This document shows positions 12,930-38,600 of a DNA stretch of 64,000 nt, piece by piece. Under the pieces are notes generated by a model that was not told where the DNA came from, searched no databases, and worked only from the letters and a program-made list of their open reading frames with translations. The DNA comes from Bispira polyomma (taxonomy: Eukaryota). Both the position numbers and the translations under genes were made by a program. Position 1 is the first letter of the stretch. Each line of letters starts with the position of its first letter. The stretch is from NCBI GenBank assembly GCA_965649765.1, contig OZ287759.1, forward strand, positions 1,488,001 through 1,552,000, in the 5' to 3' direction.

Positions 12930-14340
12930 ATAGACAAAGCACCCGCAGTAGCAAGCACTCTAGCTAGCACCCAAACTAGAAGCCTAGGATTTCCTATAGG
13001 GCATTTTATGCTAAAGCCTTAAATGGCACAAGTGGGTTTGACATTGCAAACATTTGGGACCAATAATAATTCTGTGATAGGCACATTAAAGTTTGACGTA
13101 CCCATATGACCTTGCACGAGGGATCCAAGGTAAAATGTGACCAAAAAATTGATTTCCCATGATTTCCTGTAGGTTAGTTTCACATCCCAAACCTCTACGA
13201 CCATGATTTTCTTACGTTGGTTTGACATTCTAAATCTCTAGGACCAATAATAAGCAAGTTATAAGCACTTTTAAATTTGACTACCCTCATCTGACCTTGA
13301 AGGAGGGGCCCAAGGTCAAATCTGACTACATCAGAAGATTCACAAGCCATGATTACCTATAAGTTTTGGTTTCACATTGCAAACCTGTAGGACCAATAAT
13401 AGGCGAGTTATAAGCACTTTTAAGTTGAACTACCCTCGTCTGACCTTGAAGAAGGGGTCAAAGGTCAAACCTGACCACATCAGAAGATTCTCAGCCCATG
13501 ATTTCCTATAGTTTGGCTTCACATGCCAAACCTCTAGGACCAATAATAAGAGAGATATAGACACTTTTAAAGGCCGCTACAAGGGGTACTTTAGCACTCC
13601 GTGGATGACCATGTCTGCATGCTTGTAGAGGACATATATATCTGTTATACATATCACCTATGAAGAGATTCTACCTTCTAGTTACGAGAACCAGCCAGTA
13701 GAAAAAGGTAGATAAGAAATACCCATGGCGGCCATCTTGTTTTCAGAATGAGGCTAATTTCAGTCGCAGAGATGCTTACCTCCCGATGAAGATATCCTGC
13801 AAATTTAGTAAAGCTAGCTGGTCTAGTTCTTTAAACACCCAATTTTTTGGCTTTTGAAAGCAATTTTCAAAATGCGCTGTACTTTTCAAATCTGTGAATC
13901 AAAAAAAAAATTAACTGAATCAAACTATTTCCAACAATGCACGTCACGATTAATCTATGACATAACGAAAGACACCAAGAATGCACGAAGCCATTGCCAG
14001 ACAACGCCATTTACGGACGACGCCATTTACAGACAATGCCATTTACGGACAACGCTATTAAGGGACGACTCCATTTACAGACGCCGCCATTTACGGAGGA
14101 CGCAATTTACGGACGACGCTATTGTCGGACGCCGCCATTTACGGACAATGCCATTTACTGACGACGCCATTAACGAACGCCGCCATTTACAGACGCCGCC
14201 ATTTACGAACGCTGCAATTTACGAACGACGAAATTGACGGATGACACCATTGACGGACGAAGCTATTGACGGATAAAGCATCCGCCAATAACGGACGAAA
14301 CAAAAAATGCCCACCAGTAATGGTGGACATTATTCAAAAA
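12930..14340 (+). mobile_element. Non-autonomous Helentron-like (HINE-type) element with internal tandem repeats
   Basis: 3-4 copies of a ~149-bp unit with TGACCTTGA...AAGGTCAA; GGCGGCCATCTTG motif; GACG-rich repeat tract; terminal hairpin TGCCCACCA-GTAA-TGGTGGACA then A-rich end. Confidence 0.65.
13990..14300 (+). repeat. 16-bp minisatellite, ~18 copies
   Basis: Unit GCCATTTACGGACGAC with variants. Confidence 0.95.
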
Positions 14341-15823: not shown

Positions 15824-18800
15824 CTGAAATACAAATACATGTATACTGTTATAATTATATTCTAGTTATTACAAACAATCACATTTCACTCAACGTCATC
15901 AAAAACTTTAATTTTTTTTGAAATGGACAAGATATTTTTTTATTTTACCCTCTTGCAGTTAAATGTTTTTGCAACTTTTAAGATTTTTTACTATAAATTT
16001 GATATTGTAAATTCCGAGAACTATATAAAGCCATAAAAGTGTGAATACCAGCAATCACTATTGGTCAAAATATGTTGGTAAATAGCAGAAATCAATGTGA
16101 TTTGAATCTTAATAGATTGTTGAAGTTTCAAAACACAGGTGCCAAATTGATGTTTAATCTCAGAATGCCTCTCATTAATTCAAATAGATACTACTTTAAA
16201 ATATATGTTGTCAAAATCTACCTACTGTTATCCTGCACATTTTTGTAGTTTTTACAATAAAAGTTTGGCATAATATCCTTAAACATTAACTGCAAATAAA
16301 ATAGTTATATCATTACAAACAATAATTTGGTACCCAGTCATGAACTGGTCTCCTACCACTTGTGGTTCAGTACACTACTAGTGGGGAACTAGACCTATCC
16401 ACACTCACCTGCAACTGTGTACGTATCCGTATATATTTTCATGGGCGATGGTTATACAGTTAACCAATTTAAGTAATTTCCATCCAAATCCGTAAAAAAC
16501 GCTTCTAACCCCTTTTTTTACCCATTAAAGTATATATGGATAAACATGCATGGGTGAGCACAGATATGTCTAGATCTCCACCTACAGTGCACATCAAACA
16601 GTTTGCAAGTTTGACCCCAAAATATGGGTTAGTATTCAGTGGCATAATATTGTAATCATTTGTACTAAACAATCATGGTCATAGCAAGAATTATGGGCAC
16701 CCCTGCAGTACTTTTTGCAAACTCATAATTCCATGATATAGTATTGCTGGTTATGAATGGTACAGTAGATCAAATGAAATACCCAATGTAACACATACAA
16801 TTTCATCTTTAACAAGAATGAAGTGACCACTAGCGGTCACAAATCAAGAATTGTTCAAGAGAACAAACCAACAGGCAAATATTAAAATATAACCTTCTAG
16901 CTTCAAATTACAAATTAAAACCTTATGAAACAATTCAATTTGTAGGCGATAATATAATATTTTGATGAATTTTCAGAATTGCCGAACATGCAAATTTGAC
17001 CGAATCAGCTTCGAACCCAATTTTTAAAAGCTGTTTTTACCAAACTTTCGATCTTTAGCAACACTAATAATAGTAAGTTAAACAATTTTATTATCGTCCA
17101 AGTCTTATATTTTTGCTTTACCATACCAACACTACTCTTAAGAGATGAAACTCACAGTTTTGCATCAAATTAAACACATTATTGTGGTGAACGGCGGTCG
17201 CGAAAACGCGATACTAGCATGTGGTTGGCCAGTGAAGCTATGCGCGAGGTCCCGGATGTAACCAAGGACAGATTGACCGCCATATTTAAAGACTCAACAC
17301 ATATCTCAGATAAGTGAAGTTTTAAAGTGGTAAATCGTGGGTCAGTACACACCATATTACAGCTTATTACAAGTACAGTGGTGTCTTGTTGCGTGGTTGG
17401 CGTTTTGGCCATCAACCAAGCTCAATAAGGTAAGTGTTCACTTTATTGGTACCAGAAATATATTGGTGTGGACATTGCACTTTTTTAGATCTGGTTACCT
17501 GGTAGTGAATAATTTGTAAAATAATTTACACATTATATAAAGTGGCAAGTTGTGTTTATATGTAAAAATTATATTGTAATATTTTTCAATTTTAAAAATT
17601 GAAGGGACATACAGTGAGTTTGTACCTAATTTGGTCATATGAAAATTTACTGTGAATTGTGTGTGGAATTAATATTACATTGTACTAAGTTTTGGTGCGA
17701 TTTAGTGTACTGAACTCAGTGAAAATTTGTATAGTGTGAATCGTTACATTTGGCGATTTGCTTTAGTACACATAATTTGCTACTGATTGTGTGTGAATTA
17801 TTTTTTGAAATAAATATATTGATATAATATATATAGATTCTGTATAGTATATGCTGAAGAAAAATAAAATATTGAAAGGAATAAGTAAAAGCAATATTTA
17901 TTTATAGTAAATCTGTATTTCTTTCATATTTTAAAATAGCAGATTTAAATTGTTGTGTACTGTCGACAATAATTTATTGACAGTATATTGTGGCGGTAAT
18001 TGTGTAATTTTATATAGTTGAATTAAATTTCAGTATTGTGTGAATATTTGATTATTTGACAGTGTTGATATATATATTGATAAATATTGAATAGTTGCAT
18101 GTCGATATATTGGAAAGTTGACACTAATACTAGTTAACACGATACCAGTATATAAGCAATTATTAAAGGCAAAATTGAATTATTAAATTTGTTTTGCAAT
18201 TGTATTGTGTTATATATGTAGATAGTTGACTTATAATTAAGTTAACGGAATTAAAGCAACTGTTAATTAACCGTTGTCGTGATTTTATTGCGACTATCTA
18301 GTTAGCGGTAAATATATAATAAAATTTTTTAATTAAAAAAAAAAAAAAAAAACTTTTGGAAAAAATTATATGTAGTGGAATATAGGGAGTGGATTTATGT
18401 TTCGAATCTGTCTAGTGTCAGTTGCCTGGTTATTGGACGGTATTGTGAAAGCAAATAAATTACTCCTGAGTAGTAAATTCAACTTTTGGTCGAAATTAAA
18501 TTATAGAAATAAAATTTTGGTATAAATTGTTGCTGTTGTTCTGCGAATGTGAAATTTGCATGATATAGTACATTAACATTTATTGATTAGAAATCAATCA
18601 ATTAGTCAAGTTACCAATTACTCTAGTTAAGTTGCATGTTCTGTGATTTTTTAGAGTAAATTAGGTCGGATTGGCCAAACTAAAATTTATTAAAAATTTC
18701 AATCAATTAACTAGTTTAGTAACAAATTCCTCTACTTTAGTTGCATGTTCTGTGATTTTTTAGAGTGAAATAGGCTAGTCTGATTGAAATACAATATACT

Positions 18801-18981
18801 TTGGACTAAGTTGCGTTTTATTACAATTGTAGTTGGATAGTGAAGATCGTCGTGGAAAAGTGTAATCGAAATAGAAATTCGAGTGTGGTTAAATTGTGTG
18901 TGGCAATTTTGGTGAGTTTGAAATTTTGATTAATTGCTACAAATTTCTTTCAAGCTGGGTTTTCGTGATTTAGGAAAAAAA

Positions 18982-21900
18982 ATGGCTGAGCAAATCAGTT
19001 TGAGGCAATTCGATATTGAGAATGTCACTATGGGTGAGTTAATATCGTTACCCGGTGTTGGTGAGAAGCGATCTCAGGACATTCTCGACGCGAGGGAGCG
19101 TTATAGTGGGAGGATGACCTTGGAGATGTTCAACGAATTAAAGTGGCCTTTGAGTTTGAAAAGCAAATTGATAGAAGAAAATGTGTTTATGTTTTCGAGA
19201 ATTGAGAAACCATTATCAGGGGGTGACAGAGGAAACGTAGTTGGAATGCAAACGGGAGTATCTGATCACGATGTATTTTTTAGTGAGTCGAAGCAGTCGC
19301 AGTTAACAGAATCTGATGATGATACGACTTTCGAGAAACCGGGATCGTTGGAATTGCAAACGGATAGTGAAGATGCGGCTTTTGTAAAATCGGAACCGTG
19401 GCAATCAGAGCTGACCGATGTCGATATGGCAACTGAGAAATTGAAATCATTGCAATTAGGATCGGTTGAGGAAAGTTTAACTTACAGTGAACCCGAGTTG
19501 AAAGATTTAAAGAAAATGTCTCCAGGGCAGTTTAATGTTATCTTTAACCTTTTGCAAAAGGTCATGGGTAAAATGGAATCTTTAAGTCACGGTACAGATG
19601 ACTTTAAAAAGGTTAGTGAAAAGGTAGAAGATGTATTGCCCAAACATATCGAAGTCCTCGAAAAAAAGTGCGATCGGGTGGGGTCGCAAGTAACCAGTCT
19701 TGACACTAGTGTGGTGGCACTAGGTGTAAAGGTAGGAGAAAATAAGGAAAAATATGATATGGTGGAAAGTAAGGTGCATGATCTTGATTCCAGTGTTGAG
19801 AAACTAGGTTTGAAAGTGGGACAAAATATTCAGAGTGCCCAACAGAATATTCTGAGTGTTCGACAGGAAGTTGTCAAAGTGTCTGATCAAGTTCAATTAG
19901 TGAACAGCAACATTAAGAAGGTCAATGTTGATATTGGAACTGAAGTGACCAAGGTTAAAGAAGATGTACAGGTCAACACCCAGGTAGTTGCGGAGATAAA
20001 ACAGGAAGTGAGTGGCATGTGTGAGCGCATTCAGTCTACAGATAGGAAAATACATTTGCTCGATGACAAGGTCAGGAGCGATGAGCAAATCCATGATCAG
20101 GAGTTGACAAAATTGCAGAATGAACTGGGTAGCGTGTTCTTGCATATCCAGTCAACTGATAAGCAGGTGTCAGATCTCAATCAGCAGGTGGCAAGTCAAC
20201 ATCAACCTGTAACAAAAGAATTGGTCGTTTTGAGGCAGGACGTTGGTGCTTTAAGGGATGATGTGGACAAACTAAAACTGCAACCGCAGTTAGCTACTAC
20301 TGGTGTCGGGATGACATCAGAGGTGCAGCGCATCGATGAGGATCTTAACAGATTATTGCAGGAATTATCGGCTCTGAGAGCGGAGAGGGATTCAGTTGTT
20401 GAGCACTATATGATGGAAAAGGAGGCACAAATTAAACGGATACAGCAAATGCAAGGGCGAAGGAGTGATTTGGTTGCAAAAGCTAAAAAGCTAGTCAATC
20501 AAAATCAAGAGTTTGCAGAGGAGTTGATCTGTGAGGAAGGCAAGGAAATCTGTAAAAAAATCACTGGAGGCGTTACCGACATGAAACAGAAATTTGGTGT
20601 CGAATTCACTTTGCCTTCAAGTTGGCAAACAGATTTGGAATGGACTGGATATGACTTGTTTTCCAAAGCTGAGGCTGTACCAACCACTTCACTTGATGAA
20701 TTGGATTTCGGGGAGGCACTTGACCCTCAATCTGATCGTGCCCGTAGAAGATATGCCCCTGTTCCCAAAGACCGGGGATCCAGTGGATTGTCTTCTACTC
20801 CTGTGGTGGAGCCGGCCCTTGAGCGAGTATTTGCCGAAAAGACAGTGGATGCGCGATATGTGAGTAAGAAGTCATCTCGCACTCAAGCTCAGAAAGGAAA
20901 ATCGAAGAAGCACTCTCGCCCAGAGACAGTCGTAGTGGAGAAAATGACTTTTACAGAAGAAAGTGATGACTTAGTTCTGCAGGGAGCGAGGTAGAAGAAG
21001 CGGGTGGAGCATCATCATCTAAAGTGAGTGCTACCATTCGTACTACCAGCATACGTAACCGTGGGACTTTGGATGTACCAAAACTAACATTTAATGGTGA
21101 ATACTGGAGGGGTTTCATTGGACAATTTGAAACATATGCCAAGAGTATGCCGTGGACAGAGGCAACCAAGATTGACGCGTTTTCCATGTGTTTGAGGAAA
21201 GAAGCTTCTGAATTCTACAGCATTTTACCAGCTTTAGTGACTTGTAGTTTTGAGGAGATAAAAAAGAAGTTTGAAAGTCATTTTGAGAAAACTGATGTTT
21301 CAAGCACGATCCGTTGGGAACTTTTAGCTGTCGAGCAACTGGAAGATGAATCTTTGGAAAGATTTTTAACTCGATTACAGAAAATGATCATTAGTGCGTA
21401 TCCTGATACTGCTCAACAGGAACTCAATTGTGCGAGGCCTTCTTAAAAGGTTGTCGGGATAAATCTTCGGCTTTAGCGGCTGGTACCAAGTCACTGACTA
21501 CACTGGAGGAGGCGTATAAATATGTCAAGCAAGAACAGCACATGAGAAGATCTATATATGGAAAAAAAGCATCCACTAAGATGGTGCAGCAGTTACAGTT
21601 CATCACAAACACAAATAGTTCTGGTGATGAGGTAGCCAATAGTGCCACAGCCAAACAAGTGGTTGTTCCTAGGAAATTCGATGTAAAACCCAGGGTACAG
21701 TTTGCTGAGCATTCCAACTTGGAGTCAAAAGTGGATAGCCTGGAGAGGACATTGAATGAATTAGTGAAAGGATTAAATAAAGTTCAAACGCCAAGTCCAT
21801 ACTCTCCGAACAGGAGTCAAATGACATGCTTTGAGTGTAATGACCCACGTCATTTGTACCAGGATTGTCCAAGGAGGAGGTATTCACAAGGAAGTCCTAG

Positions 21901-22216
21901 GTTAAGTGGTTCTGGATATCGCTATTCAGATTATCAAAACCGTGGTGATTACAGCAGGGACCAACCAAGATATAACTACAGTCCTAGCCGGAATAACAGT
22001 CCAAACTGTGGTAGTTATAGTCCTCAAAGAGGTAAATATAATCCCAGTAGAAGCGTTAATCCAAACTGGAGAACATCAGCCAAAGATGAGCCACCGTGAG
22101 GCTATCAAGCGAATCCACCCTATAACTCACCAAGGCGGGATTTTAAAGATGTGAAAGGTACTCCACCTCACGGGGGTTATGTGGACGGAAGAGCTAAGAT
22201 AGTTTCTTTAAACTAG
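18982..22216 (+). pseudogene. gag: Extended Gag (~1,075 aa reconstructed): HhH domain, acidic repeats, coiled coil, capsid, CCHC zinc knuckle, S/P/R/Y-rich tail
   Basis: ORFs 18934-20994, 21024-21446 and 21428-22099 join via two frameshifts (~20971, ~21428) and a TGA at 22097; capsid PKLTFNGEYWRGFIGQFE..W....K....CLRKEA; knuckle CFECNDPRHLYQDC; natural stop TAG 22214-22216. Confidence 0.9.
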
Positions 22217-22256
22217 AAAAGGGGGGTGGCATAAACGACAGCGACCCATCCCTCTT
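22207..22256 (+). promoter_or_regulatory. -1 programmed ribosomal frameshift signal (gag to pol)
   Basis: T TTA AAC directly before the gag TAG; -1 frame is open into the protease ORF (22255); GGGGGGTGG can pair with CCATCCCTC. Confidence 0.85.
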
Positions 22257-23977
22257 GAAAATCAGCGCTGTTTCTCATATTCATCAGGACGGAAATTCTC
22301 CCTATCACTGTCATGAATTGTGCGCGGCAAACCAGCAAAATCTCAGTGCCATTATCCCTTGTACAGTGAATGGTCTTTCCACGAAGGCATTATTGGATAC
22401 TGGGGCTGAGGTTAGCTTAATGAGTTTTGAGATGTATGGGAAATTGCAAGATAGACCTCGTTTAACAGAAAAATTTTAAGTAACTGGAGTAGGTAAAAAC
22501 ATGAAAATTAATGCCTGGTTATTACGAGATGTGGACATTTCTTTCCAGCATCAGTAAGGTCAAAAGTGGAATTTGTTAGTGGCTGCGATTAAAGATCCAT
22601 TAATCATCGGCATAGATTTCTTGTGTCATTTTGGGGCAGTATTGGACTTTGAAAACTTAAAATTCTGTTTGAATAAAGTTGCCAGAGATCACTCAACTTA
22701 AAAGTGAGGAAGGAACTCCTTTTGAAAATTGCAAAGTGATGCTTGACAGAAAGATCTGTGTACCACCAATAACAGTTCTAAGAACGACAGCTGTGACATC
22801 AGTGCCAATTACCCGAGAAATGGTCATTGTGTCTACAGAGAAGAATAAAGGACTACTTTTACCAAATATTTTAGTGAGTCCGGGAATTAAAGTGCCAATT
22901 CAACTCGTAAATGATACCAGTAGTTATATAGCGTTGTGGCGAGGTCATGTGTTAGGTAATGCAGTGTTGTGTGACATGGTTGTTGATGAAGGGCAGAAAG
23001 GTGTTTCTTGTAGAAATGTGACCATGTCGAATCCGCAAATGCTACCAGAACATCTTGAGGAATTGTACCAGAGGTCTATAAAAATATTGAACAGGGAGGA
23101 AGCTAGTAAGGTAAAGTCATTATAGTGGCAATTCCGGGAAACTTTCTCCACAGGGGGTCACGATTTAGGATGTTTCACTGAGGTTAAACACACAATTAAT
23201 ACTGGAAGTGAACGTCCTGTAAAACAAGCTATGCGTAGGACTCCGTTAGGTTTCGAAAAGGAAGAGGAAGACAACTTAAAGTTAATGTTGGAGATTGGCG
23301 TTATTTCTGAATCATCATCTGATTGGGCTTCAGCACCAGTCCTAGTCAGGAAAAAGGATGGAACTGTAAGATATTGTGTGGATTTTCAGAATTTAAACCA
23401 AAAAACTGTTAAAGATTTATTTCCATTACCATCAATTTCACAATGCATCGACCAGCTTTCAGGAAATAAGTACTTCTCCACTTTAGACATGGCCAGTGGT
23501 TATTGGCAAATAGAAATAGATGAAAGAGACAGACACAAAACTGCCTTTATCACCAAGTATGGGTTATTTGAACATAAGCGAATGGCATTTGGACTTTGCA
23601 ATGCACCAGCTACATTCCAGCGAGTGATACAGTTTGTGTTGCGGGGTTTAACCTAGAATAAAGTACTGGCATATATTGACGTGGTTATTTTTGGAAAAAA
23701 CTTTGAGGACCACCTAAAAAACTTGCATCTGACATTTGAGAGGTTTCAGAAATAGAACCTCAAACTGAAACCTAAAAAATGCAGTTTGTTCCATACCGAA
23801 ACACTATTCCTTGGGAGGGTAGTGAGTGAAGAAGGCATGGCAATAAATCCAGAGAATGTGGAAAAAGTAATGTCATGGCCAGTTCCAAAGTCAGTGAAAG
23901 ATGTGGAAAAATTCTTGGGATTCCTGAATTATCACCGAGAGCACATCCAGGAGTATACCAAACTTACCTCAGTGTAG
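22207..23977 (+). pseudogene. pol: pol fragment: aspartic protease, spacer domain, reverse transcriptase
   Basis: ALLDTGAEVSLM protease; WASAPVLVRKKDGTVRYCVDF, LDMASGYWQI, FGLCNAPATFQR RT motifs; YIDD reduced to YID; several stops and frameshifts. Confidence 0.95.
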
Positions 23978-27496: not shown

Positions 27497-30400
27497 ATTG
27501 AATTCCCTGCTAAATCATTTTAGTGATGAATTGTTTGAAGGCTATTTAAACGTCTGGCTTTACAAATTTTGCCCTGTAGTAGGCTCAAATTTGTAAAAAA
27601 ATCTAGTTACTTTGTTATTTTAGTGTGAATTGTACGATCGTACATCGCCTTACATGTGTAGATGCACACATAAGACCTGGCATTATCACCACCATCTCAA
27701 ACAGTGCTGTGTTTTTAGCACAAATAAGTTGTCACGTGTTTAGAGTGGATTTGCTCCTAATTGCCACATGTTCACATTTTACTTCTACTTATGGCTATCT
27801 TGTGTTATAGCAATGTGAGCTGAAAATCAACAAGGTGAGAGGCTATGAAACTCCTGGGAAGATGAAATTTATCAACATTTCAACTATTTTACTCATTTAG
27901 TCCATATAACTAACCAAGAAAACATATTATCGGTTCTACAATAACTCTAACCAATTTTGTGTTCAGAAAATATAAGTATGTAAGAATCAAAATTAGTTAT
28001 TATTTAAAAAGGATGCTTAAGTGAACACGAGGCCTGTGTATCAGTTATATTAAGGTGACCTTATATTTAAGGTAGGTGAGATGATAATTAAAAAGGATAT
28101 ACTAACATGGAGCAAGCAGCCTTTACCGCCCTCCACCCATAATTGGATATCACATCCCCAATTGCTCATTACTCACTGGCCATTCTGGCCATAATTGAAA
28201 CAAAAGCCATAGATAGGATTTTCTGGCTGCTAAGCGTCGGCCATAAAGCTTTTCTTCTCCCCTTATAAACAATACGCAAGGTGGTAATTTTATGGGCCCG
28301 TTAGGTGGGATCTAAGATATTATCTATAATGGGGCATATTTGAGGGGGTGGAGAATTACTAGTGTGTGTGATTTGCTTTTGATATCAGAAATCACATCCT
28401 AAGGGCTGTAACTTCAAAGCCCCCAAATTTTCTCTTTTTATGTGCCAATTTGGCACTGCAATTTCCATGAGGCTCAAGATCTTTTTACACTTGTTCCTAT
28501 TACACTCTCCGAAGCTTTTTTTTCTTCTATTCAATTTAACGACATCATTTTTTTACTCAAAGGTAAAATCTTTCAGTTATGTTCCTAATTTAAATTTGAG
28601 AGTTTGATGTAGAACAACAATTCCAATTACCAAGTCAACAATACTGTCCCAAGAGCCATAACTTTCTGCTGCGAACAATTTAAGGACCTGATAACCGCCC
28701 CCTACCTCTCACATCATGGGTTTAAATCTCGACCCCAGAGGTTTTCAGTTGGCTTGCTGAAAACTGGTTGTTTTTGTCTTGACACAAGACTTGTTGAAAG
28801 TGCCAATAAAGTCTGGGACTCTTAGTGCTGTGAGATACATAGATAGATTTTATTTCAGGCCCAGAGCTCATATTAAAATATATCTTGCATAAGATAAAAC
28901 AGTACCACACAAAAACATAATAAGTATGTACACAAGTACAAAGGTTCTGTATGAAAAGGCTTCAAAATATATGACATACAAGATAAAAACATCAGATAAA
29001 AATATATCAGCTTGATGTATACTAAGCTTTTTGCGAGGATTTACCTATTGTGCCACTTTTCAAATAAAAATTATCTTACAAAGCCTTCACAATATTGTTA
29101 CTGGATGTTTCTATGCACACTTTGAGATTGTATGTGATTTTTCTCTGAATAACACTAATTAAAGCAATCTATATTATTGTTCACAAACATATGGCAGGCA
29201 CTGTCTGAACAACATTGTTGTACGCCACTCATATTTTGTTAAAAGTTGCTATGTTGTAGCTTGTCCATAGAGGACAGCAATAAAAAACTAGTACAATAAG
29301 CCTGGATCACTGTTTTCACGAGCATAAATCCCCCTAGTTTGTCTCATTATTTCCTCATCATCTTGAAAACTGTAAGTTAGAATAACTCCTACATATTTTA
29401 CAGATGATACATTTAACAGGGGTGTATCAGCAAGAGACACTGTAGGGCAATTTAATTTCTACCTTTTAGGTTTAAACATTACACAATGAGATATTTTGGC
29501 ATTTAAACCATAGTCATAAGACTGGTTCATAATTAGCTGCAAGGCCATGGCTGTAGGTGCTAAAACACACACATAATCTGCATAGAATGATTGACAAAGG
29601 TAGTAACATTGCAACCGATGCTTGATTTAGTTAATGCTATAGACAGATCATCTAGCTAAATAGCAGACAACTTTGGGGATAAAATCCCACCTTGCCTTAC
29701 ACCATTGGATGTATACAACTGTTAGACACACGAGTACCCCATCTGACACATAACAGTTGATTTCTATACCAGTAAGCAATGACTCGTACAAGTAAGAGTT
29801 GTATCTTACATTTAAATAGTTTACTAAACAATGTCCAATGATTGACACGATTAAAGGCCTTAGAGGCGTCTAAAAACAAGTGAAACAGGGCTATCTAATC
29901 TTCTGTAATAGTCAATAGTATTTTTAATTGCGTAAATACACAAGTCAGAGGCATGGATGCTCTTAAAGCCAAATTGGTTGTCAGTTGTCTACAGATACAT
30001 TTCTATACTGTCTAACAGGAACAACTCAAACAGCTTGGAACAATCAGTAACCAGTGTAATGGGGCGATAATTTTTTTCATCATGCATGTCGCCATATTTG
30101 TTTATTACAATTGGTACTGACACAGTTTTCCTAAAATCATCAGGGATAAAACCATGGGTACTGATCGATGAAAATAGCACGGACAAATAGATACAGATGC
30201 ATGTTTAAAAAGTTCAGCACCATGTTTTAGACTCTTTTAGAGTTTTAATCATAGCAGGGGATACAGAGATGTTTTCCTCATTTATCTGATTAAGTTGGTT
30301 CACGACATGAGATTTACATGGACTAGTAGTAACACAGTTTAGCAGAGCTTTATACTGTTTATTCCACATTATCAAGATATTATTAGATCCACAGGCACCA

Positions 30401-31088
30401 TTTACTTTTTCCAGAAGTGGACTATTTAACTTTAAGTTATGTGATAATTTGAGCTCTGAGCATTTCCAGAAACACTTCATGTAAGGACACCAATCGCACC
30501 TCTAGGGTTATAGACTGAATCGTAGCATTCAAATGGAAAATTTGGCAGTAGACTTGCTGCTGGGTGTTGATTTACAGTACAGAGATACTGGACTGACTTG
30601 TTCTAGCATATTTAACCAGTAGAGGGGGCCTCGGTAGTGTAGTCTTCATTTTTTGGTCTTTCATATGATACCATTTGAGTCTAAGTATAGTTAATATGTG
30701 CATAATACTACTGTTGCTGAACTTTAAAAATACTGACCCTTGCTGAGTACACAGTAAACATCTCAAATGGTTTATATATTTCTATAAAATGAACTAATGA
30801 AATAATGTTCCAAATAAAAGCTTTTTTAATGCTGTAAACTGTATGCATCATTTATTCATTGAGTTTACTTATGTTGAACGATAATCAACAGGCACATAAA
30901 ACATCTGAAATAGGGTCATTAGTATGGTAATGCATGTACCTAATCATCACTTTCAGAGTTATCACAGTAAACAGCCATGTTTTGCAAGATTTACAAGCCT
31001 CTGTCCATATTTAACTATTTGATTTATACTGGCAAATGTCACTTCTTCGGCAACCAAACTTTTTACATTTGCATGCAGTAAGCTCCAA
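27495..31088 (+). repeat. Segmental duplication, copy 1 (paralog 32165-36810)
   Basis: Co-linear similarity from ATTGAATTCCCTGCTAAATC to GCATGCAGTAAGCTCCA. Confidence 0.9.
28890..30480 (-). mobile_element. Decayed non-LTR retrotransposon RT region (RTE-X-like)
   Basis: NYRPITLVTDCSKLFELFLL, NQFGFK, FLDASKAFNRVNHWTLFSKL, YAD motifs in broken ORFs 30214-30480, 29989-30186, 29697-29879; clade call tentative. Confidence 0.85.
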
Positions 31089-33953
31089 GATGGCAGTTGG
31101 AGCAGGTTCGTTGGACATTAAGAGGGGTGAATGAGTTCCATCCGAGAGATAGCAGACAGGTCCATTTGGTGATAGAAGATTTGGCATCGCAACCAGACAT
31201 TGTGTTTATGCATAAAATGTGTTCACTTGTACTGTCTTTAATTGCATCTAGCTTGTGATGTGAATAATTCTTGTACATTCATTTCAAGTCAACTAATCAG
31301 CCCAAACTAGATATCCTAAGCTAAAGATACTAATATTAAGTTTAAAATAATTGGCTTCTAGTGAAGTAGTTAATGTAAATTGAAGAAAATAATACACAAA
31401 ATGAAAATAAAATCACTTCATTGTATTGGTTCCTAAACACCAAACATGTCTGTAAAATAAATAGCCAAGGTTGGGAGAGAGCTTGTTTATTTACACTACT
31501 ATTTTAACACTAAATTGAAAAAAGTTAACATCACAGATCGAACTATCCATTTTCATTTCTGGTACATGGTATTTCCATTATCAGTTTTGTTTATTTATGG
31601 CCTCTGAGTTGCTTAACTGGGAAATACAACATCAATCACAATCAAGCAAGTTCTAATGAAATAAAAAAGAATTGAATAAATGACACTCAAAATACGCTTT
31701 CAGACATTGATGCAGAATGGATTTGCACAAATTTTACAAACTCTCGAAACCCCAGGTCATAACATACCACACCTACAACCAAAAAGAGGTCGGTACCTTC
31801 AGTTATATATTTGGGGACTGGACAACAGCTATGTCATAACACTCCTTATATTTGTGGAAGATTCATTTTTGTTGGAAAGTCAACTAACTACATTTCTCAG
31901 CTGTATTGTCACCTGAACTGTAAGCACTTACTTCTGGCTGCACCAGGAACTTCAATATTTCTGCCTAGAAATTGACACTTTCTGTGAACTGTTTGGAACA
32001 AAAGTAAGAACTTTGTAGCCAATACAGTTGCAGAAAATATCTTATACAAATATACAGTATAAGGAAAAATACCACTGGTGATTAATTTACTAAATAGAAA
32101 TTTGCGGTTAAATAAATCTATATGAATCAAGGAAATGACAATTATTTAATGTAACATATATATAAATATTGAATTCTCTGCTAAATCGTTTTAGTGGTGA
32201 TTTGCTCAAACCCTATATAATCATCTACTTTTACCAATTCAATCTGGTAGTAATTTCAGCTGAGAATTAACAAGGTGAGAGGCTATGGAACTCCTGGGGA
32301 GATGCTATTGATCAACATTTCAGTTTTAACCCTTTTACTCATTTATTTTTATAGAACAATCAAAAGTGACATATTATTAATTATACAATAACTTAAACCA
32401 ATTTTGTGTTCAGAAAGTATAAGTATGTAATAATAATTATTGGTTATTATTTAAAAAGGATGCTCAAGTGAACACGAGGCCTGTGTATCAGTTTTATTAA
32501 GGTGACCTTATACCTAAGATAAATAAGGTGATAATAAAAAGAGGGTGTAATAATTTGGAGCAAGCAGCCTTTACCGGCCTCCACCCATAATTGGACATCA
32601 CATCCCCGATTGCTCATTAGTCAGTGGCCATGCTGGCCAAAATTGAAAGCAAAGCCACAGATAGAATTTTCTGGCTGCTTAGCGTTGACCATAAAGCTTT
32701 TCCTCTCCCCCTTATAAACAATGGTGCTAGGTGGTAATTTATGGGCCTGTTAGGTGGGATCTAAGACATTATCTATAACGGGGCATACTTGAGGGGATGG
32801 AGAAGGTACTAATGTGTGTGATTTGCTTTTGATATCAGAAATCACATTCTAAAGGCTGTAGCTTCAAAGCCCCCATTTCTTTTCCTCTGATGTGCCAATT
32901 TGGTACTGCAATTTCCATGAGGCTGAAGATATTTTTACACTTGGTTCCAATTACACTATCTGTAGCTTTCTGTTCTTCTATTTAATTTAACATCATCATT
33001 TTTGTAATCAAAGATAAAATCTTTCCGTTATGTTCCTCATTTAGTTTTGAGAGTTTAATGTAGTACAACAATTCCAATTACCAAGTTAACAATACTGTTG
33101 CAAGAGCCATAACTTTCTGCTGCGAACAATTTAAAACAGATAAAACAGTATGACACAAAACATAATAAGTGTGTACACAATTACAAAGGTTCTGTATGAA
33201 ATGGCTTCAAAATATATGACATACAAGATAAAAACATTTCAGATAAATATATATCAGATTGATGTATACTAAGCTTTTTGCCAGGATTTACTTATTGTGC
33301 CACTTTTCAAAGAAAATTATCGCACAAAACCTTCACAATATTGTTGCTGGATGTTCCTTTGCACACTTGGTGACTGTATATGCTTTTTCTCCGAATAACA
33401 CTTAATCAATCTACATCATTGTTCAAAAACATATGACAGACACTGTCTCTGTATCCATATCCCAGTAACCTCCGAACAACATTGTTGTACGCCACTCATA
33501 TTTTGTTAAAAGTTATTATGTTGTAGATTGTCCACAGAGGACAGCAATAACACCTAGTACAATAAGCCTGCGGTAATTTAACTTTGCCATGGGTGAAGCA
33601 CTGTTTCCACGAGCATGAATCCCCCTAGTTTGTCCCATTATTTCCTTATAATAGATATTTTACAGATAATATATTAAATCCGGGTGTATCAGCAAAAGAC
33701 AGTGTAGGGCAATTTAATTTGTACCTTGGTGTATATCTGTAGGTGCTAAAAGACAGAGATTATCTTTATAGAAGAGATGATAAACACAAGTAGTGACATG
33801 GCAACTAAGTTAGTTAATGCAGATCATCTGGTTCAATAGCAAATAACTTAAGGGATAGAATCTCACCTTGCCTTACACCATTGGATGTACTAAAACTATT
33901 AGACACATAAGTACCCCAGCTGATACAAAACAGTAGGTTTCTTTTCCAGTAAA

Positions 33954-34192
33954 GGGCCGCGGTGGCCTAGTGGTTAGCAAGCATTGCACTTCCCAATCAC
34001 TGGTCTCTGACCTCTAGGATTTACGATGCCCATGTGGGAAAGGTTGTAGTTCCTTACTGTGGGCCGCTGGTTTCAGTGCAAAACCTTGATCAACTGTATG
34101 CAGTGTTACCTCTAGCGATTCCAACTACCCGTCTCAATATAACCTAAACAGGTACTAGAGTGGAAGTTAAATATCCCAATTCAAAATTCAAA
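33954..34192 (+). mobile_element. Near full-length tRNA-derived SINE with TSD
   Basis: GGGCCGCGGTGGCCTAGTGGTTAG head, TTCAAA tail repeats; 14-bp TSD TTCTTT(T/A)CCAGTAA; empty site in the paralog at ~29762-29776. Confidence 0.9.
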
Positions 34193-35339
34193 TTCTTTAC
34201 CAGTAAGCAATGACTCGTACAAGTGAGAGTGGTATCTTACATCTGATTAAAAAAATGAAACTATTTAATTTTCTGTAATAGTCAATGGTGTTTTTAATTG
34301 TTTAAATACACATGTCAGTGGCATGGTTGCTCTTGAAGCCAAATTTGTTGTCAGTTGTCTGCAGATACGTGTCTATATTGTCTAACAGGAACAACCCAAA
34401 CAGTTTAGAACAAGCAGTAACAAATGCAATGGGGCCATAATCATTTTCAGCATGCATGTCACCAGATTTTTTTTTTTTTTACAATTGGTACTCAGCTTTC
34501 ATAAAATTATCAGGAATAAAACCATGGTTAATGATACATGAAAATAACGTGAACAAATTGATACAAATGCATATTTCAGCACTTATTCCATCATGAGGAC
34601 TAGATTTATCAACTTTTAAATTGTATATATATATACAATGATTTTTTTTTGTTTAATATATATATATAAATGATAATGATTTTGTATTGTCTGTTAAACA
34701 AAAAAAAAAAATCAATTAAAAAGAAAGAGAAAAGTTATCGACTTCCAATGGTGTTTTTATCACATCAGGGGATACATAGATATTTTCCTAATCTATCTGA
34801 TTAAGTTGGTTCACAACATAAGATTTACATGCATTAGTAGTAACACAGTTTAGCAGAGCTTTATAATGTTTCTTCCACATTATCACAATATTACTAGATC
34901 CACAGGCACCATTTACTTTTACCAACAGTGGAGTATTTAACTTTAGGTTCTGTTATACTCTGAGCTCTGTGACATGCATCCCCAGAAAGACTTCAAGTAA
35001 GAACAACACTCGCACCTCTAGGGTCATTGTGGCATTCAAATGGAAAAGTTGGCAGTATATTTCCTGCTGGGTGTTGGTTTACAGTACAGAGATACTGGAC
35101 TGACTTGTTCTAGCATATTTAACCAGTAGAGAGGGCCTCGGTAGTGTAGTCATACCTATCTGCATCCCATCTTCCAACCCTGCTCTGAGTCCCTAAACTC
35201 TGTACCATGCTGTCACACAGGTGACATTATAAACACACCAATCCAATTTAAGTTATACCGGTGTGGTGCAGCGATAACACTTTAACACCTTCAGTTTTAG
35301 TTTCAGTTTCGAATCTCGGATTGCATGTTGGAAACCTTG

Positions 35340-35640
35340 CAGTAGAATCAAATTGTTCTGGAAATTACAGAGGTATAATACTTAGCAGCATAGTTGGAAA
35401 ATTGTTTGATACAATATTACTGATGCAAACATAACACATTTTTACAACTAGTGATCTTCAAACCAAAATATTTGACACATGAATTCACCTTTGTGATGAA
35501 TGTAGTTGTACAGTATTATGTAAATAATGGATCCAATTAGTACATAATACTCACTGACTGTAGTAAGGCATTTGACAGAGTGAATTATATTAAGATTTTT
35601 TCTTTGTTGACCAAATACTTCTAGTTAACTTATATACTAC
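35340..35640 (+). mobile_element. Non-LTR retrotransposon RT fragment
   Basis: SGNYRGIILSSIVGKLFDTILL and LTDCSKAFDRVNY motifs. Confidence 0.8.
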
Positions 35641-38600
35641 GCATGTAAAAGTGTGTAATGGGGTATTTTTGTAAGAGCTCAACCTTACGCTAACCACCTA
35701 GGAAGTTTAACTGGTCCAAAATTAAATGATTATGGCGTTTCTTATATTACTGATAAATTTCGTTTTGCATGCAATGCACTATGAACGCCTTCTTCAATGT
35801 GCCATGTTCTGTAAAGTACAAACTGTTCACAACATATTGCATGCCATTGTATTAATTATTAGACCGAGATTTGTTCAGTTATCATTGAATAGCTATGACT
35901 GTACAACATTTGAAAACGTTGCATAAGGTATCACAAAGTGAGTATTCCTGGTGTGTATGTCTCCTGACGTTATATGTCACCACAAAATAGTCTACATTTT
36001 GTCCTCTGCCTTGATTATTTAAAACTGTTTCAACTAATTGTTTCACCAAAGTGGCAGTGAGTAGCATGAAGCAGCAGTACGTAGCTCTACTTAGTAGTAG
36101 GTATTGATAAAGTAGCTGTTTTTTTTTATATATTAATCTGGTGCCAGATTTGTTACAAAAAAATCTGACACGCACAATAAACTTAAGTATTCTTACTACT
36201 AAGTGGCAGTACATTTTAAATTCTGTGTTAAACATAACTAACGCTACAGGAATTTTCTGGACATTACTGAACGAGCCTTTAAATAAACAGCACAGTGCAG
36301 AAATCCTGGACAACTGACCAGTACTAGCTTCTTTGACAAAAAACTACATGTTTTGATATAATGCAATAATGCTTCTGTTAATACTTTTTGTCTTATTCTC
36401 AGTATTTTTAAAAATATGTTGACATTCATACACCAAATTAATCTTTATTTTTTTTCTCTCTTGCCTGATACCATTTGAGTCCAAGTCTAGTTAATGTCTG
36501 CATAATACAACTATTGTTAAACATGTTCCAAACAAAGCTTTTGTTTATGCTGTACACTGTATGCATCATTCATTCATGTTTACCTATTGTGAAAGCTAAT
36601 CATCAGACACATAAAACATGTGAAATAGGGTTATTTGTTTGGTAATGCATGTACTTAATCATCAATTTCAGAGTTATCACAGTAAACTTAAATGTTTTCG
36701 CAGGATTTACTGGCAATGGAAAAAAGCCTTGTTGCATATTTAACTGTTTAATTTACAAATATCACTTCTTCTGCAACCAAATTCTTAACATTTTGCATGC
36801 AGTAAGCTCCAGTAAGCTAAAAAGGTATAATTTGTAAAGACCTTGTGTCCCAACTGTTGTTCTCTGTTTTACGTCTGCATGAGTTCTGGGGATGTTTGGC
36901 GTAATGATCCAGAACGAGTAATGGGTTCATAAAAATATGCCTAATTTGTGCTTCCTTAGGAATCTCAACAAGCTTGGTCGTTCACAGGATGTTTACTAGG
37001 GACTGGACTGAGATATTCGATATCTGTGATTATTTTAACTTAATGCTTTTTATTTGGACAAAGCGATGCATGAAGTAACTTTGGGGTTAAAATCTGTGGT
37101 GGGCAATAACTGAGGTTACAGATACATTTCACAACACAGATACTACAACATTAACTATCTTTACAAAAAAATTGTAGCTAAGTTCTAAGTTTCATAATTT
37201 TTCATCAATCTTGTATACTTTCCATAATATTCTTCAAGCAGTTAAAGAATTGAATAGAATCTGAGATTTTTGTCCTACGTCTGAACAATCTAAATAACAC
37301 TGTAACTAAAGTAATAAGTTTTTGGAAAATTCCTTGACTTATTGTAATTCAATGTATTAATGTTAAAGATATATTAGAGTAATGAACTATTTCAATAAAC
37401 TTGATGTTTTTTTGCCATGTATTTTTTTTCTCTGTGTTTTGTGTTTTGTATTTTGTCAGTATTGTTACATATGAAATATCCTGTAGACGTTTTGTTTTGG
37501 TAACAGCTGCTTTACGATTTAACAGGAAGTAGAGCTAGATTGTAAACAGATGACAACATGCTGTGACAACAAAGACAAGTTGTAATTGACTTCTGTGGTT
37601 GCATCTTTCTTTAAAATTTAATGATAATATTACTATTACATTATCTATTCTTGGGGCTATGCTGGGAGAAACATGGCCAAAGAATCACTCCTTTTTGTAA
37701 GATCATTAACTACTATAAGTCAGTGTAGGTATTCTTACATAAATAATAGCATTATAAATTATAATTAATCCAAGGTATACATTTTACTATCATGTAAAAG
37801 GCAAAATTAAAACGCAAATCTTTGTAGCCCAAAAGGAGTGAATAAATTCTTGGTTCTCGTATTCACTCTAAGCTTGAATAAATTTCAATGGCATGTAATC
37901 AGTTCAGTAGTTTTAGTATAATCCGAGGAATGACAACTGGAATGGGATAATAACGTAACTTCCTTGGTGGAGGTAAACAATTCGCTAGCATTCACAGAAG
38001 GCAGTGTATTTAATCTATCCCATATCCTCTAGTAATCTGATGCATACTATTCACCCAGGGTTTGCGATTAACCTTGCTTTCAACATGTCTTATGTCAAAT
38101 TACAACCAGACTTTGAGCAGGTATATTGCCAACTTTCCCTCATGTCCGAGATTTGAACCTGTGGCAGCAGGGGTGGGTGGTGAATATGCTTCACACACAC
38201 CATCGCCCCTCACTTTCATGTAGTAAATCCAGTATCTTTGTGTAATACTGGTGATTAACCTAAAATGGGTCTGCTGTTTATGTCCAGTCCCCAAGTGTCA
38301 AATGACAAGTTCAAAGGTCAATTGTCCAAAGGTCAAGTTGCAGTTGTCAGATTGATAGTTTCAGTAAGATATAAAGAAGGCAGTAAAAGATTCTGTTTGA
38401 GGCATTATTATTTACATATTAGTGTCTTATACATATACAGTTAGGTCGGTATAGAATGCTTTAAAAAATTTAAATATGTAAATTTTACAGCCCCAAAAAG
38501 GATAATCCAACAATATTAATGACAGCTTATGTCAAACAATAATACACAATGTATCACAAGTAACATATATAGCCATTATTCTTGGCCATTAGAGACACAT

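What the first reader, a model, noticed from the sequence alone, without database searches (positions are those of the whole stretch)
18982..19200. Gypsy Gag begins with a ComEA-like helix-hairpin-helix DNA-binding domain
Seen: the gag reading frame starts MAEQISLRQFDIENVTMGELISLPGVGEKRSQDILDARERYSGRMTLEMFNELK. Known: this fits the HHH_3/ComEA pattern (hydrophobic-D/N-I-N-x-A-x-x-x-E-L-x-x-L-P-G-I-G-x-K-x-A-x-x-I-x-x-x-R), a non-specific dsDNA-binding module of bacterial DNA-uptake receptors and EEPD1-like proteins. Canonical Ty3/Gypsy Gag carries only capsid and nucleocapsid domains. Inference: this lineage fused a DNA-binding module to its particle protein, which could tether particles or pre-integration complexes to chromatin, or hold the cDNA. 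I do not know a functional description of this architecture; it is the best candidate for a novel system here.
Basis: partly seen in the sequence, partly recalled or inferred. Interest (0 to 1): 0.82.

Follow-up and report, generated by a model that had tools for sequence, protein, structure and literature searches.

The report
Gypsy Gag with HhH N-terminus
A dead, truncated Ty3/Gypsy retrotransposon whose capsid protein (Gag) starts with a ComEA/EEPD1-type helix-hairpin-helix module on a long coiled-coil stalk; a second related element family has the same layout, and I found no description of it in the papers searched.

Summary
The sequence is there as described. The ORF at 18982-20994 starts with a helix-hairpin-helix (HhH) motif. 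Pfam scores are below threshold: HHH 17.7 bits and HHH_3 16.3 bits for the window, HHH_3 25.6 bits (cut-off 27) for a 36%-identical relative. Other evidence supports the call. In a search of 1.84 billion proteins, the only hits outside the element family are true HHH_3 repeat proteins (E 2e-9 to 8e-4). A three-sequence family profile puts ComEA and EEPD1 at the top of the PDB (E 3e-4 to 7e-4). Only the first hairpin is canonical and the second is degenerate. Fold matches are local or not significant.

In the window this ORF is not fused to the capsid domain, because the frame changes at about 20970. Three relatives read through in one frame. Two independent insertions of a second family (L001, L010) have the same order: LTR, primer-binding site (PBS), about 1.5 kb of leader, HhH, coiled coil, capsid (CA), nucleocapsid (NC), protease (PR), reverse transcriptase (RT); a third, 5'-truncated insertion (L007) matches from the HhH domain on. 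So this is the N-terminal part of Gag, not an unrelated ORF.

Function is untested. The domain is acidic (pI about 5). Gag topology would put it outside the particle, which argues against holding cDNA. The window copy is broken and cut off inside RT. I rate it a new variant of a known kind, of moderate interest.

The parts
17215..17446 (+). Likely remnant of the 5' LTR. The start is approximate. The end is placed by alignment.
   Evidence: The block of positive GC skew starts at about 17200-17500. Window 17429-17472 matches the LTR end of L010. In alignment A7 the 3' LTR of L001 stops matching just before the conserved TGG.
17447..17459 (+). Primer-binding-site-like sequence (starts TGGTACCAGAA) directly after the LTR end.
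   Evidence: It is conserved between the window, L010 and the 5' side of L001, and is absent after the 3' LTR of L001. No matching tRNA gene lies in the window.
17460..18981 (+). Long AT-rich 5' leader (20-32% GC, G more frequent than C) with no ORF of note. It contains a 74-nt sequence present twice, 109 nt apart (18592-18774).
   Evidence: The related family also has about 1.4-1.9 kb between the LTR and the start codon.
18982..20994 (+). Intact 670-codon ORF that forms the N-terminal accessory region of Gag: HhH domain, acidic linker, coiled coil, conserved C-terminal segment.
   Evidence: It is collinear with the L010 pieces. Its C-terminal half is fused in frame to the capsid domain in P0002, P0008 and P0011.
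19003..19194 (+). HHH_3-like domain (residues 8-71).
   Evidence: AlphaFold2 pLDDT is about 78-88 over residues 10-70. Sequence support comes from Pfam, PDB, hhalign and the library search. It is 36-43% identical to the N-termini of L010 and L001.
19039..19086 (+). Canonical first HhH unit. The hairpin is P-G-V-G in the window and H-G-I-G in the relatives.
   Evidence: Pfam HHH aligns to residues 16-36. The model superposes on ComEA 8dss at 1.1 A over 30 columns, and on 2duy, Rad51 and LigA at 0.9-1.1 A. G25 and G27 are invariant across the family.
19138..19170 (+). Degenerate second hairpin position. W-P-L (I-P-D or N-P-D in relatives) stands where ComEA has G-I-G.
   Evidence: Alignments. 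hhalign stops at residue 54-55.
19195..19533 (+). Acidic, probably disordered linker (residues 72-184). It cannot be aligned with the relatives.
   Evidence: Net charge is -11 over residues 101-150. tblastn and blastp find no match here. pLDDT is below 50 after residue 74.
19534..20658 (+). Coiled-coil region (residues 185-559) ending in a conserved segment (20605-20658).
   Evidence: It is 36% identical to L010 over 411 columns, E 3e-66. The only Pfam hits are weak matches to coiled-coil families. Family fragments P0001-P0008 match here.
20965..20994 (+). Frame change that separates the N-terminal ORF from the capsid domain in this copy, followed by the stop at 20992-20994.
   Evidence: tblastn with L010 gag moves from frame 1 (ending at 20970) to frame 3 (starting at 20973). 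Relatives are continuous across this point.
20973..21434 (+). Gag capsid domain (PF03732).
   Evidence: Pfam E 4.5e-8, 33.6 bits, above the cut-off. It is 77% identical to L010 and 72% to P0002.
21434..22096 (+). Rest of Gag in a third frame. The CCHC zinc knuckle is at 21827-21868. An in-frame stop lies at 22097.
22318..22689 (+). Aspartic protease (D-T-G motif within 22390-22416) with in-frame stops at 22477 and 22555.
22685..23974 (+). Reverse transcriptase after another frame change. It has stops at 23123, 23654 and 23753, the YxDD motif is altered (23672-23686), and homology ends abruptly at 23974. No RNase H, integrase or 3' LTR follows.
   Evidence: RVT_1 E 8e-16. Also. A tblastx search with the downstream parts of the relatives found nothing further near this element.

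Best explanation
Shown: window 17.2-24.0 kb is the 5' two-thirds of a decayed Ty3/Gypsy-type LTR retrotransposon. Its Gag carries an N-terminal extension of about 660 residues before the usual capsid and nucleocapsid domains. The extension consists of a 65-residue HHH_3-like domain (one canonical HhH hairpin plus one degenerate one), an acidic linker, a coiled coil of about 375 residues, and a short conserved segment. In this copy a frame change at about 20970 cuts the extension off from the capsid domain. The rest of gag-pol carries two more frame changes and six stops, and ends inside RT.

Inferred: in active relatives the extension is made as part of Gag. Because Gag N-termini face outward in assembled retroviral and Ty3 particles, the coiled coil would form a stalk that pairs or bundles Gag N-termini and displays many HhH tips on the particle surface. 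The most likely role of the tip is low-affinity, sequence-independent binding of duplex nucleic acid or chromatin. Pairing of two canonical hairpins by the coiled coil, and the many copies per particle, would strengthen that binding. This would amount to a tether or targeting device built into Gag, comparable in effect to MLV p12 or the foamy virus Gag chromatin-binding site. It would not act as an internal cDNA holder.
For: Anatomy:
- ORFs, frames and lesions.
- Pfam hits for gag, PR and RT.
- LTR end and PBS conserved with the relatives, and an LTR pair in L001.
- Continuous GC-skew block from 17.3 to 24.3 kb.

The extension is part of Gag:
- P0002, P0008 and P0011 read from the extension into the capsid and nucleocapsid domains in one frame.
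- L010 has only one frame change and one stop between the start codon and the capsid domain.
- The window and L010 are collinear from residue 1 to residue 559.

The N-terminus is an HhH module:
- Library-wide hits are only to HHH_3 repeat proteins.
- L010 scores 25.6 bits, E 1.3e-5, on HHH_3 by itself.
- The family profile ranks ComEA and EEPD1 first in the PDB, E 3e-4 to 7e-4.
- hhalign gives 98% probability over 45-46 columns.
- The first HhH unit superposes at about 1 A on ComEA, Rad51 and LigA.
- The model superposes at 2.0 A over 57 columns, TM 0.57, on a giant-virus ComEA-type protein.

Constraint: the domain is 36-43% identical between the two families, while the linker next to it cannot be aligned at all.

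Precedents: Cer1 GAG has a long N-terminal coiled coil (PMC10309623). The HhH protein BAF binds and bridges DNA in retroviral pre-integration complexes (PMC3381236).
Against: - No Pfam HhH model reaches its gathering score, for the window or for L010. L001 alone gives no Pfam hit.
- No Foldseek match has E <= 0.001. The second model used an alignment that included HHH_3 repeats, so its likeness to ComEA is partly built in.
- The hhalign template was built from proteins that had been picked up by the query, which biases that comparison.
- The second hairpin is degenerate.
- The domain is acidic (net -2 to -3, pI about 5), and the basic residues after the hairpin are not conserved in L001. This weakens the case for plain DNA binding.
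- dN/dS for the domain within the second family is mixed: 0.86 over 62 codons and 0.26 over 44 codons.
- The N-termini of three other lineages (P0002, P0008, P0011) could not be reached because their contigs are short.
- Nothing here tests binding, oligomerisation or particle topology.
Confidence: 0.55

Rival explanations
1. The N-terminal domain is a true HhH-derived fold, but it no longer binds DNA. It serves as a protein-protein contact, an oligomerisation cap for the coiled coil, or an RNA-binding module (for example, for genomic RNA or a host factor).
For: The domain is acidic, and the basic residues after the hairpin are not conserved. The second hairpin is degenerate. HhH folds with non-DNA partners are known, such as the NusA acidic repeats and ribosomal protein S13 on rRNA (my own knowledge). 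S13 appears among the weak PDB hits.
Against: The closest sequence relatives are the DNA-binding ComEA/EEPD1 class. The G-h-G hairpin that contacts phosphates through backbone amides is invariant in the family. Several true HHH_3 repeats are just as acidic.
Confidence: 0.28
2. In this genome, the HhH/coiled-coil ORF in the window is kept open by selection as a host gene derived from Gag (exaptation), while the rest of the element decays.
For: There are no disabling lesions in 2013 nt of ORF1, against 3 frame changes and 6 stops in the next 3.0 kb. Codon proneness to stops is equal, 5.2% versus 5.3%. Poisson P is 0.002 to 0.018. The start context is good.
Against: The comparison was made after seeing the pattern, and on a single locus. 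There are no expression data, no ortholog and no second copy from this genome. In L001 and L007 the same region is broken into many small ORFs. A recombinant copy with a younger 5' part would look the same.
Confidence: 0.1
3. The HhH resemblance is convergent or due to chance. The N-terminus is a lineage-specific helical domain unrelated to HHH_3.
For: All Pfam scores are below the curated cut-offs. No fold hit is significant. Library E-values for proteins with near-identical tandem repeats are inflated, because one weak match is counted several times.
Against: Two sequences only 36% identical to each other each pick HHH_3 as their best Pfam family. Adding relatives strengthens the ComEA and EEPD1 hits rather than diluting them. 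Two-repeat proteins also reach E < 1e-3. The match runs about 46 residues past the hairpin, through the spacing typical of HHH_3.
Confidence: 0.06
4. ORF 18982-20994 is an unrelated upstream gene, or part of another element that happens to lie next to a Gypsy fragment.
For: In the window it is in a different frame from the capsid domain and ends with its own stop.
Against: Relatives fuse it in frame to the capsid domain. The order is the same in the second family (L001/L005/L006, L007, L010) and in the fragments L002-L004. The conserved LTR end and PBS lie upstream of it. The GC-skew block is continuous across it.
Confidence: 0.01

Closest known systems
HHH_3 domain (PF12836) of ComEA and of metazoan EEPD1
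   Same: It is the best-matching family by Pfam, by PDB profile search and by the library-wide search. The match covers the pre-helix segment, the first helix, the G-h-G hairpin, the second helix and the following G-x-hydrophobic spacer over about 46 residues. The first HhH unit superposes at about 1 A.
   Different: It is below the curated threshold. The second hairpin has lost its glycines. The domain is acidic. It sits at the N-terminus of a retrotransposon Gag rather than in a DNA-uptake receptor or a nuclease. DNA binding is untested.
Cer1 (C. elegans Ty3/Gypsy) GAG
   Same: [quoted passage not shown]
   Different: No HhH DNA-binding-type module is reported at the Cer1 GAG N-terminus. The helix-hairpin-helix mentioned in that paper is the H domain of a different protein, CERV, and describes a leucine-zipper hairpin. 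I did not test sequence relatedness to Cer1 because I had no Cer1 sequence.
Chromatin tethers inside retroviral Gag (MLV p12, foamy virus Gag chromatin-binding sequence)
   Same: The proposed logic is the same: a Gag-borne element outside the capsid and nucleocapsid core attaches the particle or pre-integration complex to chromatin (my own knowledge).
   Different: Those tethers are short peptide motifs that bind nucleosomes or histones, not folded HhH domains. Nothing here shows tethering.
BAF (BANF1), a host HhH protein in retroviral pre-integration complexes
   Same: It is a small HhH DNA binder that works as a dimer and bridges DNA without sequence specificity (PMC3381236). The coiled coil here could likewise pair HhH units.
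   Different: BAF is a host factor, not part of Gag. No sequence relationship was detected.
Canonical Ty3/Gypsy Gag (capsid PF03732 plus CCHC nucleocapsid; PEG10- and Arc-like)
   Same: The capsid domain, zinc knuckle and PR-RT order are all present.
   Different: It carries an extra N-terminal region of about 660 residues with an HhH domain and a coiled coil, and a 5' leader of about 1.5 kb.
Other domain captures by LTR retrotransposons (chromodomain in chromovirus integrase, ALKBH domain in orchid Gypsy elements, extra ORFs in bdelloid elements)
   Same: A rare accessory domain has become fixed in an element lineage (PMC9289625 and PMC5408684, listed; chromoviruses from my own knowledge).
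   Different: The domain is different, and so is its position: the Gag N-terminus rather than the pol C-terminus or a separate ORF.

Membership tests
HHH_3 / ComEA-type (HhH)2 domain (PF12836) | Score at or above the Pfam gathering cut-off (27 bits) | tested here: not met
   Window 16.3 bits. L010 relative 25.6 bits, E 1.3e-5. L001 gives no hit.
HHH_3 / ComEA-type (HhH)2 domain (PF12836) | Significant sequence relationship to proven family members | tested here: met
   phmmer against 1.84 billion proteins: seven repeat proteins at E 1.9e-9 to 8.3e-4, the four scanned being true HHH_3 proteins. Family profile against the PDB: ComEA 3e-4 and 4e-4, EEPD1 7e-4. hhalign probability 98%, with the caveat that the template was selected by the query.
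HHH_3 / ComEA-type (HhH)2 domain (PF12836) | First HhH unit with a hydrophobic-G-hydrophobic-G hairpin between two helices | tested here: met
   P-G-V-G in the window and H-G-I-G in relatives; both glycines are invariant. Helices at 17-21 and 27-40. Superposition at 0.9-1.1 A over 27-31 columns on ComEA, Rad51 and LigA.
HHH_3 / ComEA-type (HhH)2 domain (PF12836) | Second HhH unit with its own glycine hairpin | tested here: not met
   W-P-L, I-P-D or N-P-D stands at that position. Profile alignments end at residue 54-55. Two helices are still predicted there, at 47-51 and 57-65. Some archaeal HHH_3 repeats are similarly degenerate.
HHH_3 / ComEA-type (HhH)2 domain (PF12836) | Whole-domain fold match to a solved or predicted (HhH)2 structure | tested here: inconclusive
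   There is no Foldseek hit with E <= 0.001. The best whole-domain match is the Indivirus ComEA-type protein: TM 0.57, 2.0 A over 57 columns, E 2.1.
HHH_3 / ComEA-type (HhH)2 domain (PF12836) | Sequence-independent binding of double-stranded DNA | not testable with these tools
   The only proxy is charge: net -2 to -3, pI about 5.
Ty3/Gypsy (Metaviridae) LTR retrotransposon | Gag with a capsid domain (PF03732) and a CCHC zinc knuckle | tested here: met
   PF03732 at 33.6 bits, above the 24.1 cut-off. Zinc knuckle at 21827-21868.
Ty3/Gypsy (Metaviridae) LTR retrotransposon | pol order PR-RT-RNase H-integrase | tested here: inconclusive
   PR is followed directly by RT in the window. An RT_RNaseH domain follows RT in L001. 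No integrase was found in the window, which is truncated at 23974, or in the decayed 3' part of L001.
Ty3/Gypsy (Metaviridae) LTR retrotransposon | Flanking LTRs and a primer-binding site | tested here: inconclusive
   The window keeps only a probable 5' LTR end and a PBS that is conserved with the relatives. A pair of about 225-275 nt (86-94% identical) flanks the L001 copy. There is no 3' LTR in the window.
   Not met in the window, where the frame changes at about 20970. Met for the C-terminal half of the extension in P0002, P0008 and P0011. In L010 the HhH start and the capsid domain are separated by only one frame change and one stop. No fully uninterrupted HhH-to-NC frame was seen.

The most novel reading that the evidence does not exclude
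A lineage of invertebrate Ty3/Gypsy elements has built a nucleic-acid or chromatin-binding HhH tip on a coiled-coil stalk into Gag itself. Particles, rather than integrase, would then carry the tether that brings them to DNA. In this genome the HhH/coiled-coil ORF may also have outlived its element as an expressed gene.
Probability: 0.2. Interest if true: 0.75.

Novelty: new variant of a known kind. Interest (0 to 1): 0.5.

Why it matters
Gag proteins of LTR retrotransposons are usually described as capsid plus nucleocapsid. How particles or pre-integration complexes of non-chromovirus Ty3/Gypsy elements reach chromatin is poorly understood.

A folded HhH module of the ComEA/EEPD1 type, held on a long coiled coil at the outward-facing end of Gag, would be a new kind of accessory device. 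It gives a directly testable hypothesis: binding of DNA or chromatin strengthened by many weak contacts. It also adds a case to the short list of domain captures by LTR elements.

If the open ORF in this dead copy is expressed, it would be a candidate for a Gag-derived host gene that is not based on the capsid domain.

Tried and rejected
- Word search with the whole ORF: nothing.
- Word search with the N-terminal profile: only the L001 peptide itself.
- Word search with P0011: one new protein, P0019, which led to the well-preserved copy L010.
- Scans of JGI metagenomes and IMG/VR with a capsid-domain alignment: no relatives. A first attempt failed because the alignment had too many gaps.
- Short contigs L002, L003, L004, L008 and L009 give no upstream sequence, so the N-termini of those lineages remain unknown.
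- Single-sequence AlphaFold2 model with Foldseek: confident helices but no significant match. The ClpS hits came from a small predicted sheet, and I rejected them as noise.
- The model built with an alignment gave only local or non-significant HhH matches.
- dN/dS within the second family: too few codons and decayed copies, so inconclusive.
- Search for an LTR pair in the window and for downstream RNase H or integrase: none. The copy is truncated.
- tRNA search for the PBS partner and Rfam scan: nothing.
- Literature searches for HhH, HHH_3 or ComEA together with retrotransposon Gag: no description found. The ComEA hits were author names.
- The reading as an unrelated upstream ORF was rejected on the relatives' in-frame fusions and collinearity.

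Handling of operator limits:
- Broken genes were searched piece by piece.
The consensus lines printed by the alignment tools were not taken further.
- No contig looked human.
Full report
**Observation**

The ATG at 18982 has a favourable context. It opens an uninterrupted 670-codon frame that ends at 20994. The window has no N runs.

**Anatomy of the locus**

Downstream of the ORF lie, in changing frames:
- a Gag capsid domain (PF03732, 33.6 bits, above cut-off);
- a CCHC zinc knuckle at 21827-21868;
- an aspartic protease (D-T-G within 22390-22416);
- a reverse transcriptase (RVT_1, E 8e-16).

I mapped the lesions by tblastn with the better-preserved relative L010:
- frame changes at about 20970, 21434 and 22687;
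- in-frame stops at 22097, 22477, 22555, 23123, 23654 and 23753;
- the expected -1 shift between gag and pol;
- an abrupt end of homology at 23974.

The YxDD motif of the RT is altered (23672-23686). No RNase H, integrase or 3' LTR follows.

A block of positive GC skew runs from about 17.3 to 24.3 kb. At 17429-17472 the window matches the LTR end of the relatives. The next bases (17447-17459, starting TGGTACCAGAA) are conserved with L010 and with the 5' side of L001, but not with the sequence after the 3' LTR of L001. That is the behaviour expected of a primer-binding site.

So the locus is the 5' two-thirds of a dead LTR retrotransposon. A leader of about 1.5 kb lies between the PBS and the start codon.

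**Is the ORF part of Gag?**

In the window it is not in frame with the capsid domain. A phmmer search against 1.84 billion representative proteins found ten fragments of the same family that match residues 334-662. Three of them (P0002, P0008, P0011) continue in one frame into the capsid domain, and P0011 runs on through the zinc knuckle. The window's two frames abut exactly at the corresponding alignment column. The separation in the window is therefore a lesion, not the native layout.

Longer contigs from one ENA assembly (ERZ22147071) carry a second family, about 70% identical to the window at the nucleotide level in gag-pol:
- L001, L005 and L006 are one locus. L006 lies on a second contig with the same flanking genes, probably allelic.
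- L007 is an independent, 5'-truncated insertion.
- L010 is an independent and much better preserved insertion.

L001 has a flanking direct-repeat pair of about 225-275 nt.

In L001 and L010 a start codon followed by A-E opens a domain that aligns with window residues 1-71 at 36-43% identity. L007, whose first roughly 19 codons are deleted, aligns from residue 20. A coiled-coil region follows, 36% identical to window residues 185-559 (E 3e-66). Then come the capsid domain, nucleocapsid, PR and RT in the same order. In L010 only one frame change and one stop interrupt the path from the start codon to the capsid domain.

This rules out the reading as an unrelated upstream ORF. The N-termini of the P0002, P0008 and P0011 lineages could not be reached because their contigs are short.

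**Is the N-terminus an HhH domain?**

Pfam places HHH (17.7 bits), HHH_3 (16.3) and HHH_5 among the top hits for the window peptide, all below their cut-offs. Stronger evidence comes from four other results:

1. In the library-wide search, the only hits outside the family are seven prokaryotic proteins with tandem repeats that match residues 4-54 (E 1.9e-9 to 8.3e-4). The four I scanned are true PF12836 proteins. E-values for proteins with near-identical repeats are inflated, but two-repeat proteins also pass 1e-3.
2. The L010 N-terminus, only 36% identical to the window, scores 25.6 bits (E 1.3e-5) on HHH_3 by itself.
3. Adding relatives sharpens the signal. PDB hits go from E 0.05-1.6 for the single sequence, to 7e-4 to 5e-3 for the top six hits with two sequences, to ComEA 3e-4 and 4e-4 and EEPD1 7e-4 as the top three with three sequences.
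4. hhalign against 11 HHH_3 repeats gives 98% probability over 45-46 columns. The template proteins had been selected by the query, so this is not independent.

Structure prediction gives a compact domain, with pLDDT about 78-88 over residues 10-70 and four helices. Foldseek finds no match with E <= 0.001.
- In the single-sequence model the weak hits mix HhH proteins with ClpS.
- In the model built with an alignment, the first HhH unit superposes at 0.9-1.1 A on ComEA, Rad51 and LigA.
- In that same model, the whole domain superposes at 2.0 A over 57 columns (TM 0.57) on a giant-virus ComEA-type protein.
- The alignment behind that second model included HHH_3 repeats, so the agreement is partly built in.

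The second hairpin lacks glycines in all family members.

My reading is that this is an HHH_3-derived domain with one canonical and one degenerate HhH unit. Membership by the curated threshold is not met. Homology is probable.

**Function**

Nothing here tests binding. For a DNA-binding role:
- the nearest relatives are the dsDNA-binding ComEA/EEPD1 class;
- the G-h-G hairpin is invariant;
- the domain is conserved while the adjacent linker cannot be aligned.

Against it:
- the domain is acidic (pI about 5), and the basic residues after the hairpin are not conserved;
- dN/dS within the second family is mixed.

From established capsid structures of retroviruses and Ty3 (my own knowledge), the Gag N-terminus points outward and the nucleocapsid inward. 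The HhH tip would therefore sit on the outside, at the end of a coiled coil of about 375 residues. This favours an external tether, with the coiled coil pairing HhH units and the many copies per particle adding strength.

Two precedents exist. Cer1 GAG has a long N-terminal coiled coil (PMC10309623). The host HhH protein BAF bridges DNA in pre-integration complexes (PMC3381236).

**Novelty**

Full-text searches for HhH, HHH_3 or ComEA together with retrotransposon Gag found no description of this architecture. This covers only the held library. Repbase and GyDB consensus annotations could not be consulted.

I rate it a new variant of a known kind: an ordinary Ty3/Gypsy backbone with an unusual Gag N-terminal extension, seen in at least two related families.

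**An unexplained point**

The 2013-nt N-terminal ORF has no lesion, while the next 3.0 kb has nine. Codon proneness to stops is equal in the two regions. Poisson P is 0.002 to 0.018, computed after seeing the pattern. Chance, a recombinant copy with a younger 5' part, and selection on the ORF cannot be told apart here.

- Broken genes were searched in pieces.
- No contig looked human.
- A functional test that would need a working element was referred.

Noticed in passing
window 18982-23974: The Gag N-terminal ORF (2013 nt) has no disabling lesion. The following 3.0 kb has 3 frame changes and 6 stops and is truncated. Codon proneness to stops is equal in both parts. Poisson P is 0.002-0.018, computed after seeing the pattern. 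Possible exaptation, a recombinant copy, or chance.
   Followed up: partly
window 13028-13571 (149-nt tandem repeat) and L010:3780-4190: This satellite in the window is 83-84% identical to a tandem repeat on contig ctg26430l of ENA ERZ22147071. The window's genome and that assembly's source are therefore closely related taxa. The organism was not identified.
   Followed up: partly
L010:8344-13734: Well-preserved copy of the sister family. It has one frame change and one stop in the Gag extension, one frame change in the zinc knuckle, and an uninterrupted 566-residue PR-RT ORF that runs to near the contig end. This suggests recent activity of that family.
   Followed up: partly
window 17460-18981: Unusually long (about 1.5 kb), very AT-rich leader between the PBS and the gag start. 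It contains a 74-nt sequence present twice, 109 nt apart (18592-18665 and 18701-18774). The sister family has a leader of similar length.
   Followed up: partly
window 13985-14273: Array of about 18 copies of a 16-nt unit. It overlaps a spurious 127-codon ORF.
   Followed up: no
window 27784-31000 and 32224-36700: Tandem duplication of a segment of about 3-4.4 kb, 80-94% identical, with spacing of about 4.2-4.5 kb. Content not examined.
   Followed up: no
window 62196-63221 (-), 61588-61916 (-), 41025-41414 (-): Other reverse-transcriptase fragments (RVT_1, E 1e-5 and 4e-6, below cut-off) from different retroelements.
   Followed up: no
window 23672-23686: The catalytic YxDD box of the RT reads Y-I-D-V-V in this copy. 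L010 keeps the double aspartate.
   Followed up: no
L010:1-2578: Long tandem arrays with periods of about 133 nt and about 170 nt upstream of the element on the same contig.
   Followed up: no
P0009 and P0012: Signal-peptide-bearing proteins, apparently archaeal, with 5-6 tandem HHH_3 repeats. Their second hairpin is also degenerate (no G-I-G), like the retrotransposon domain.
   Followed up: no
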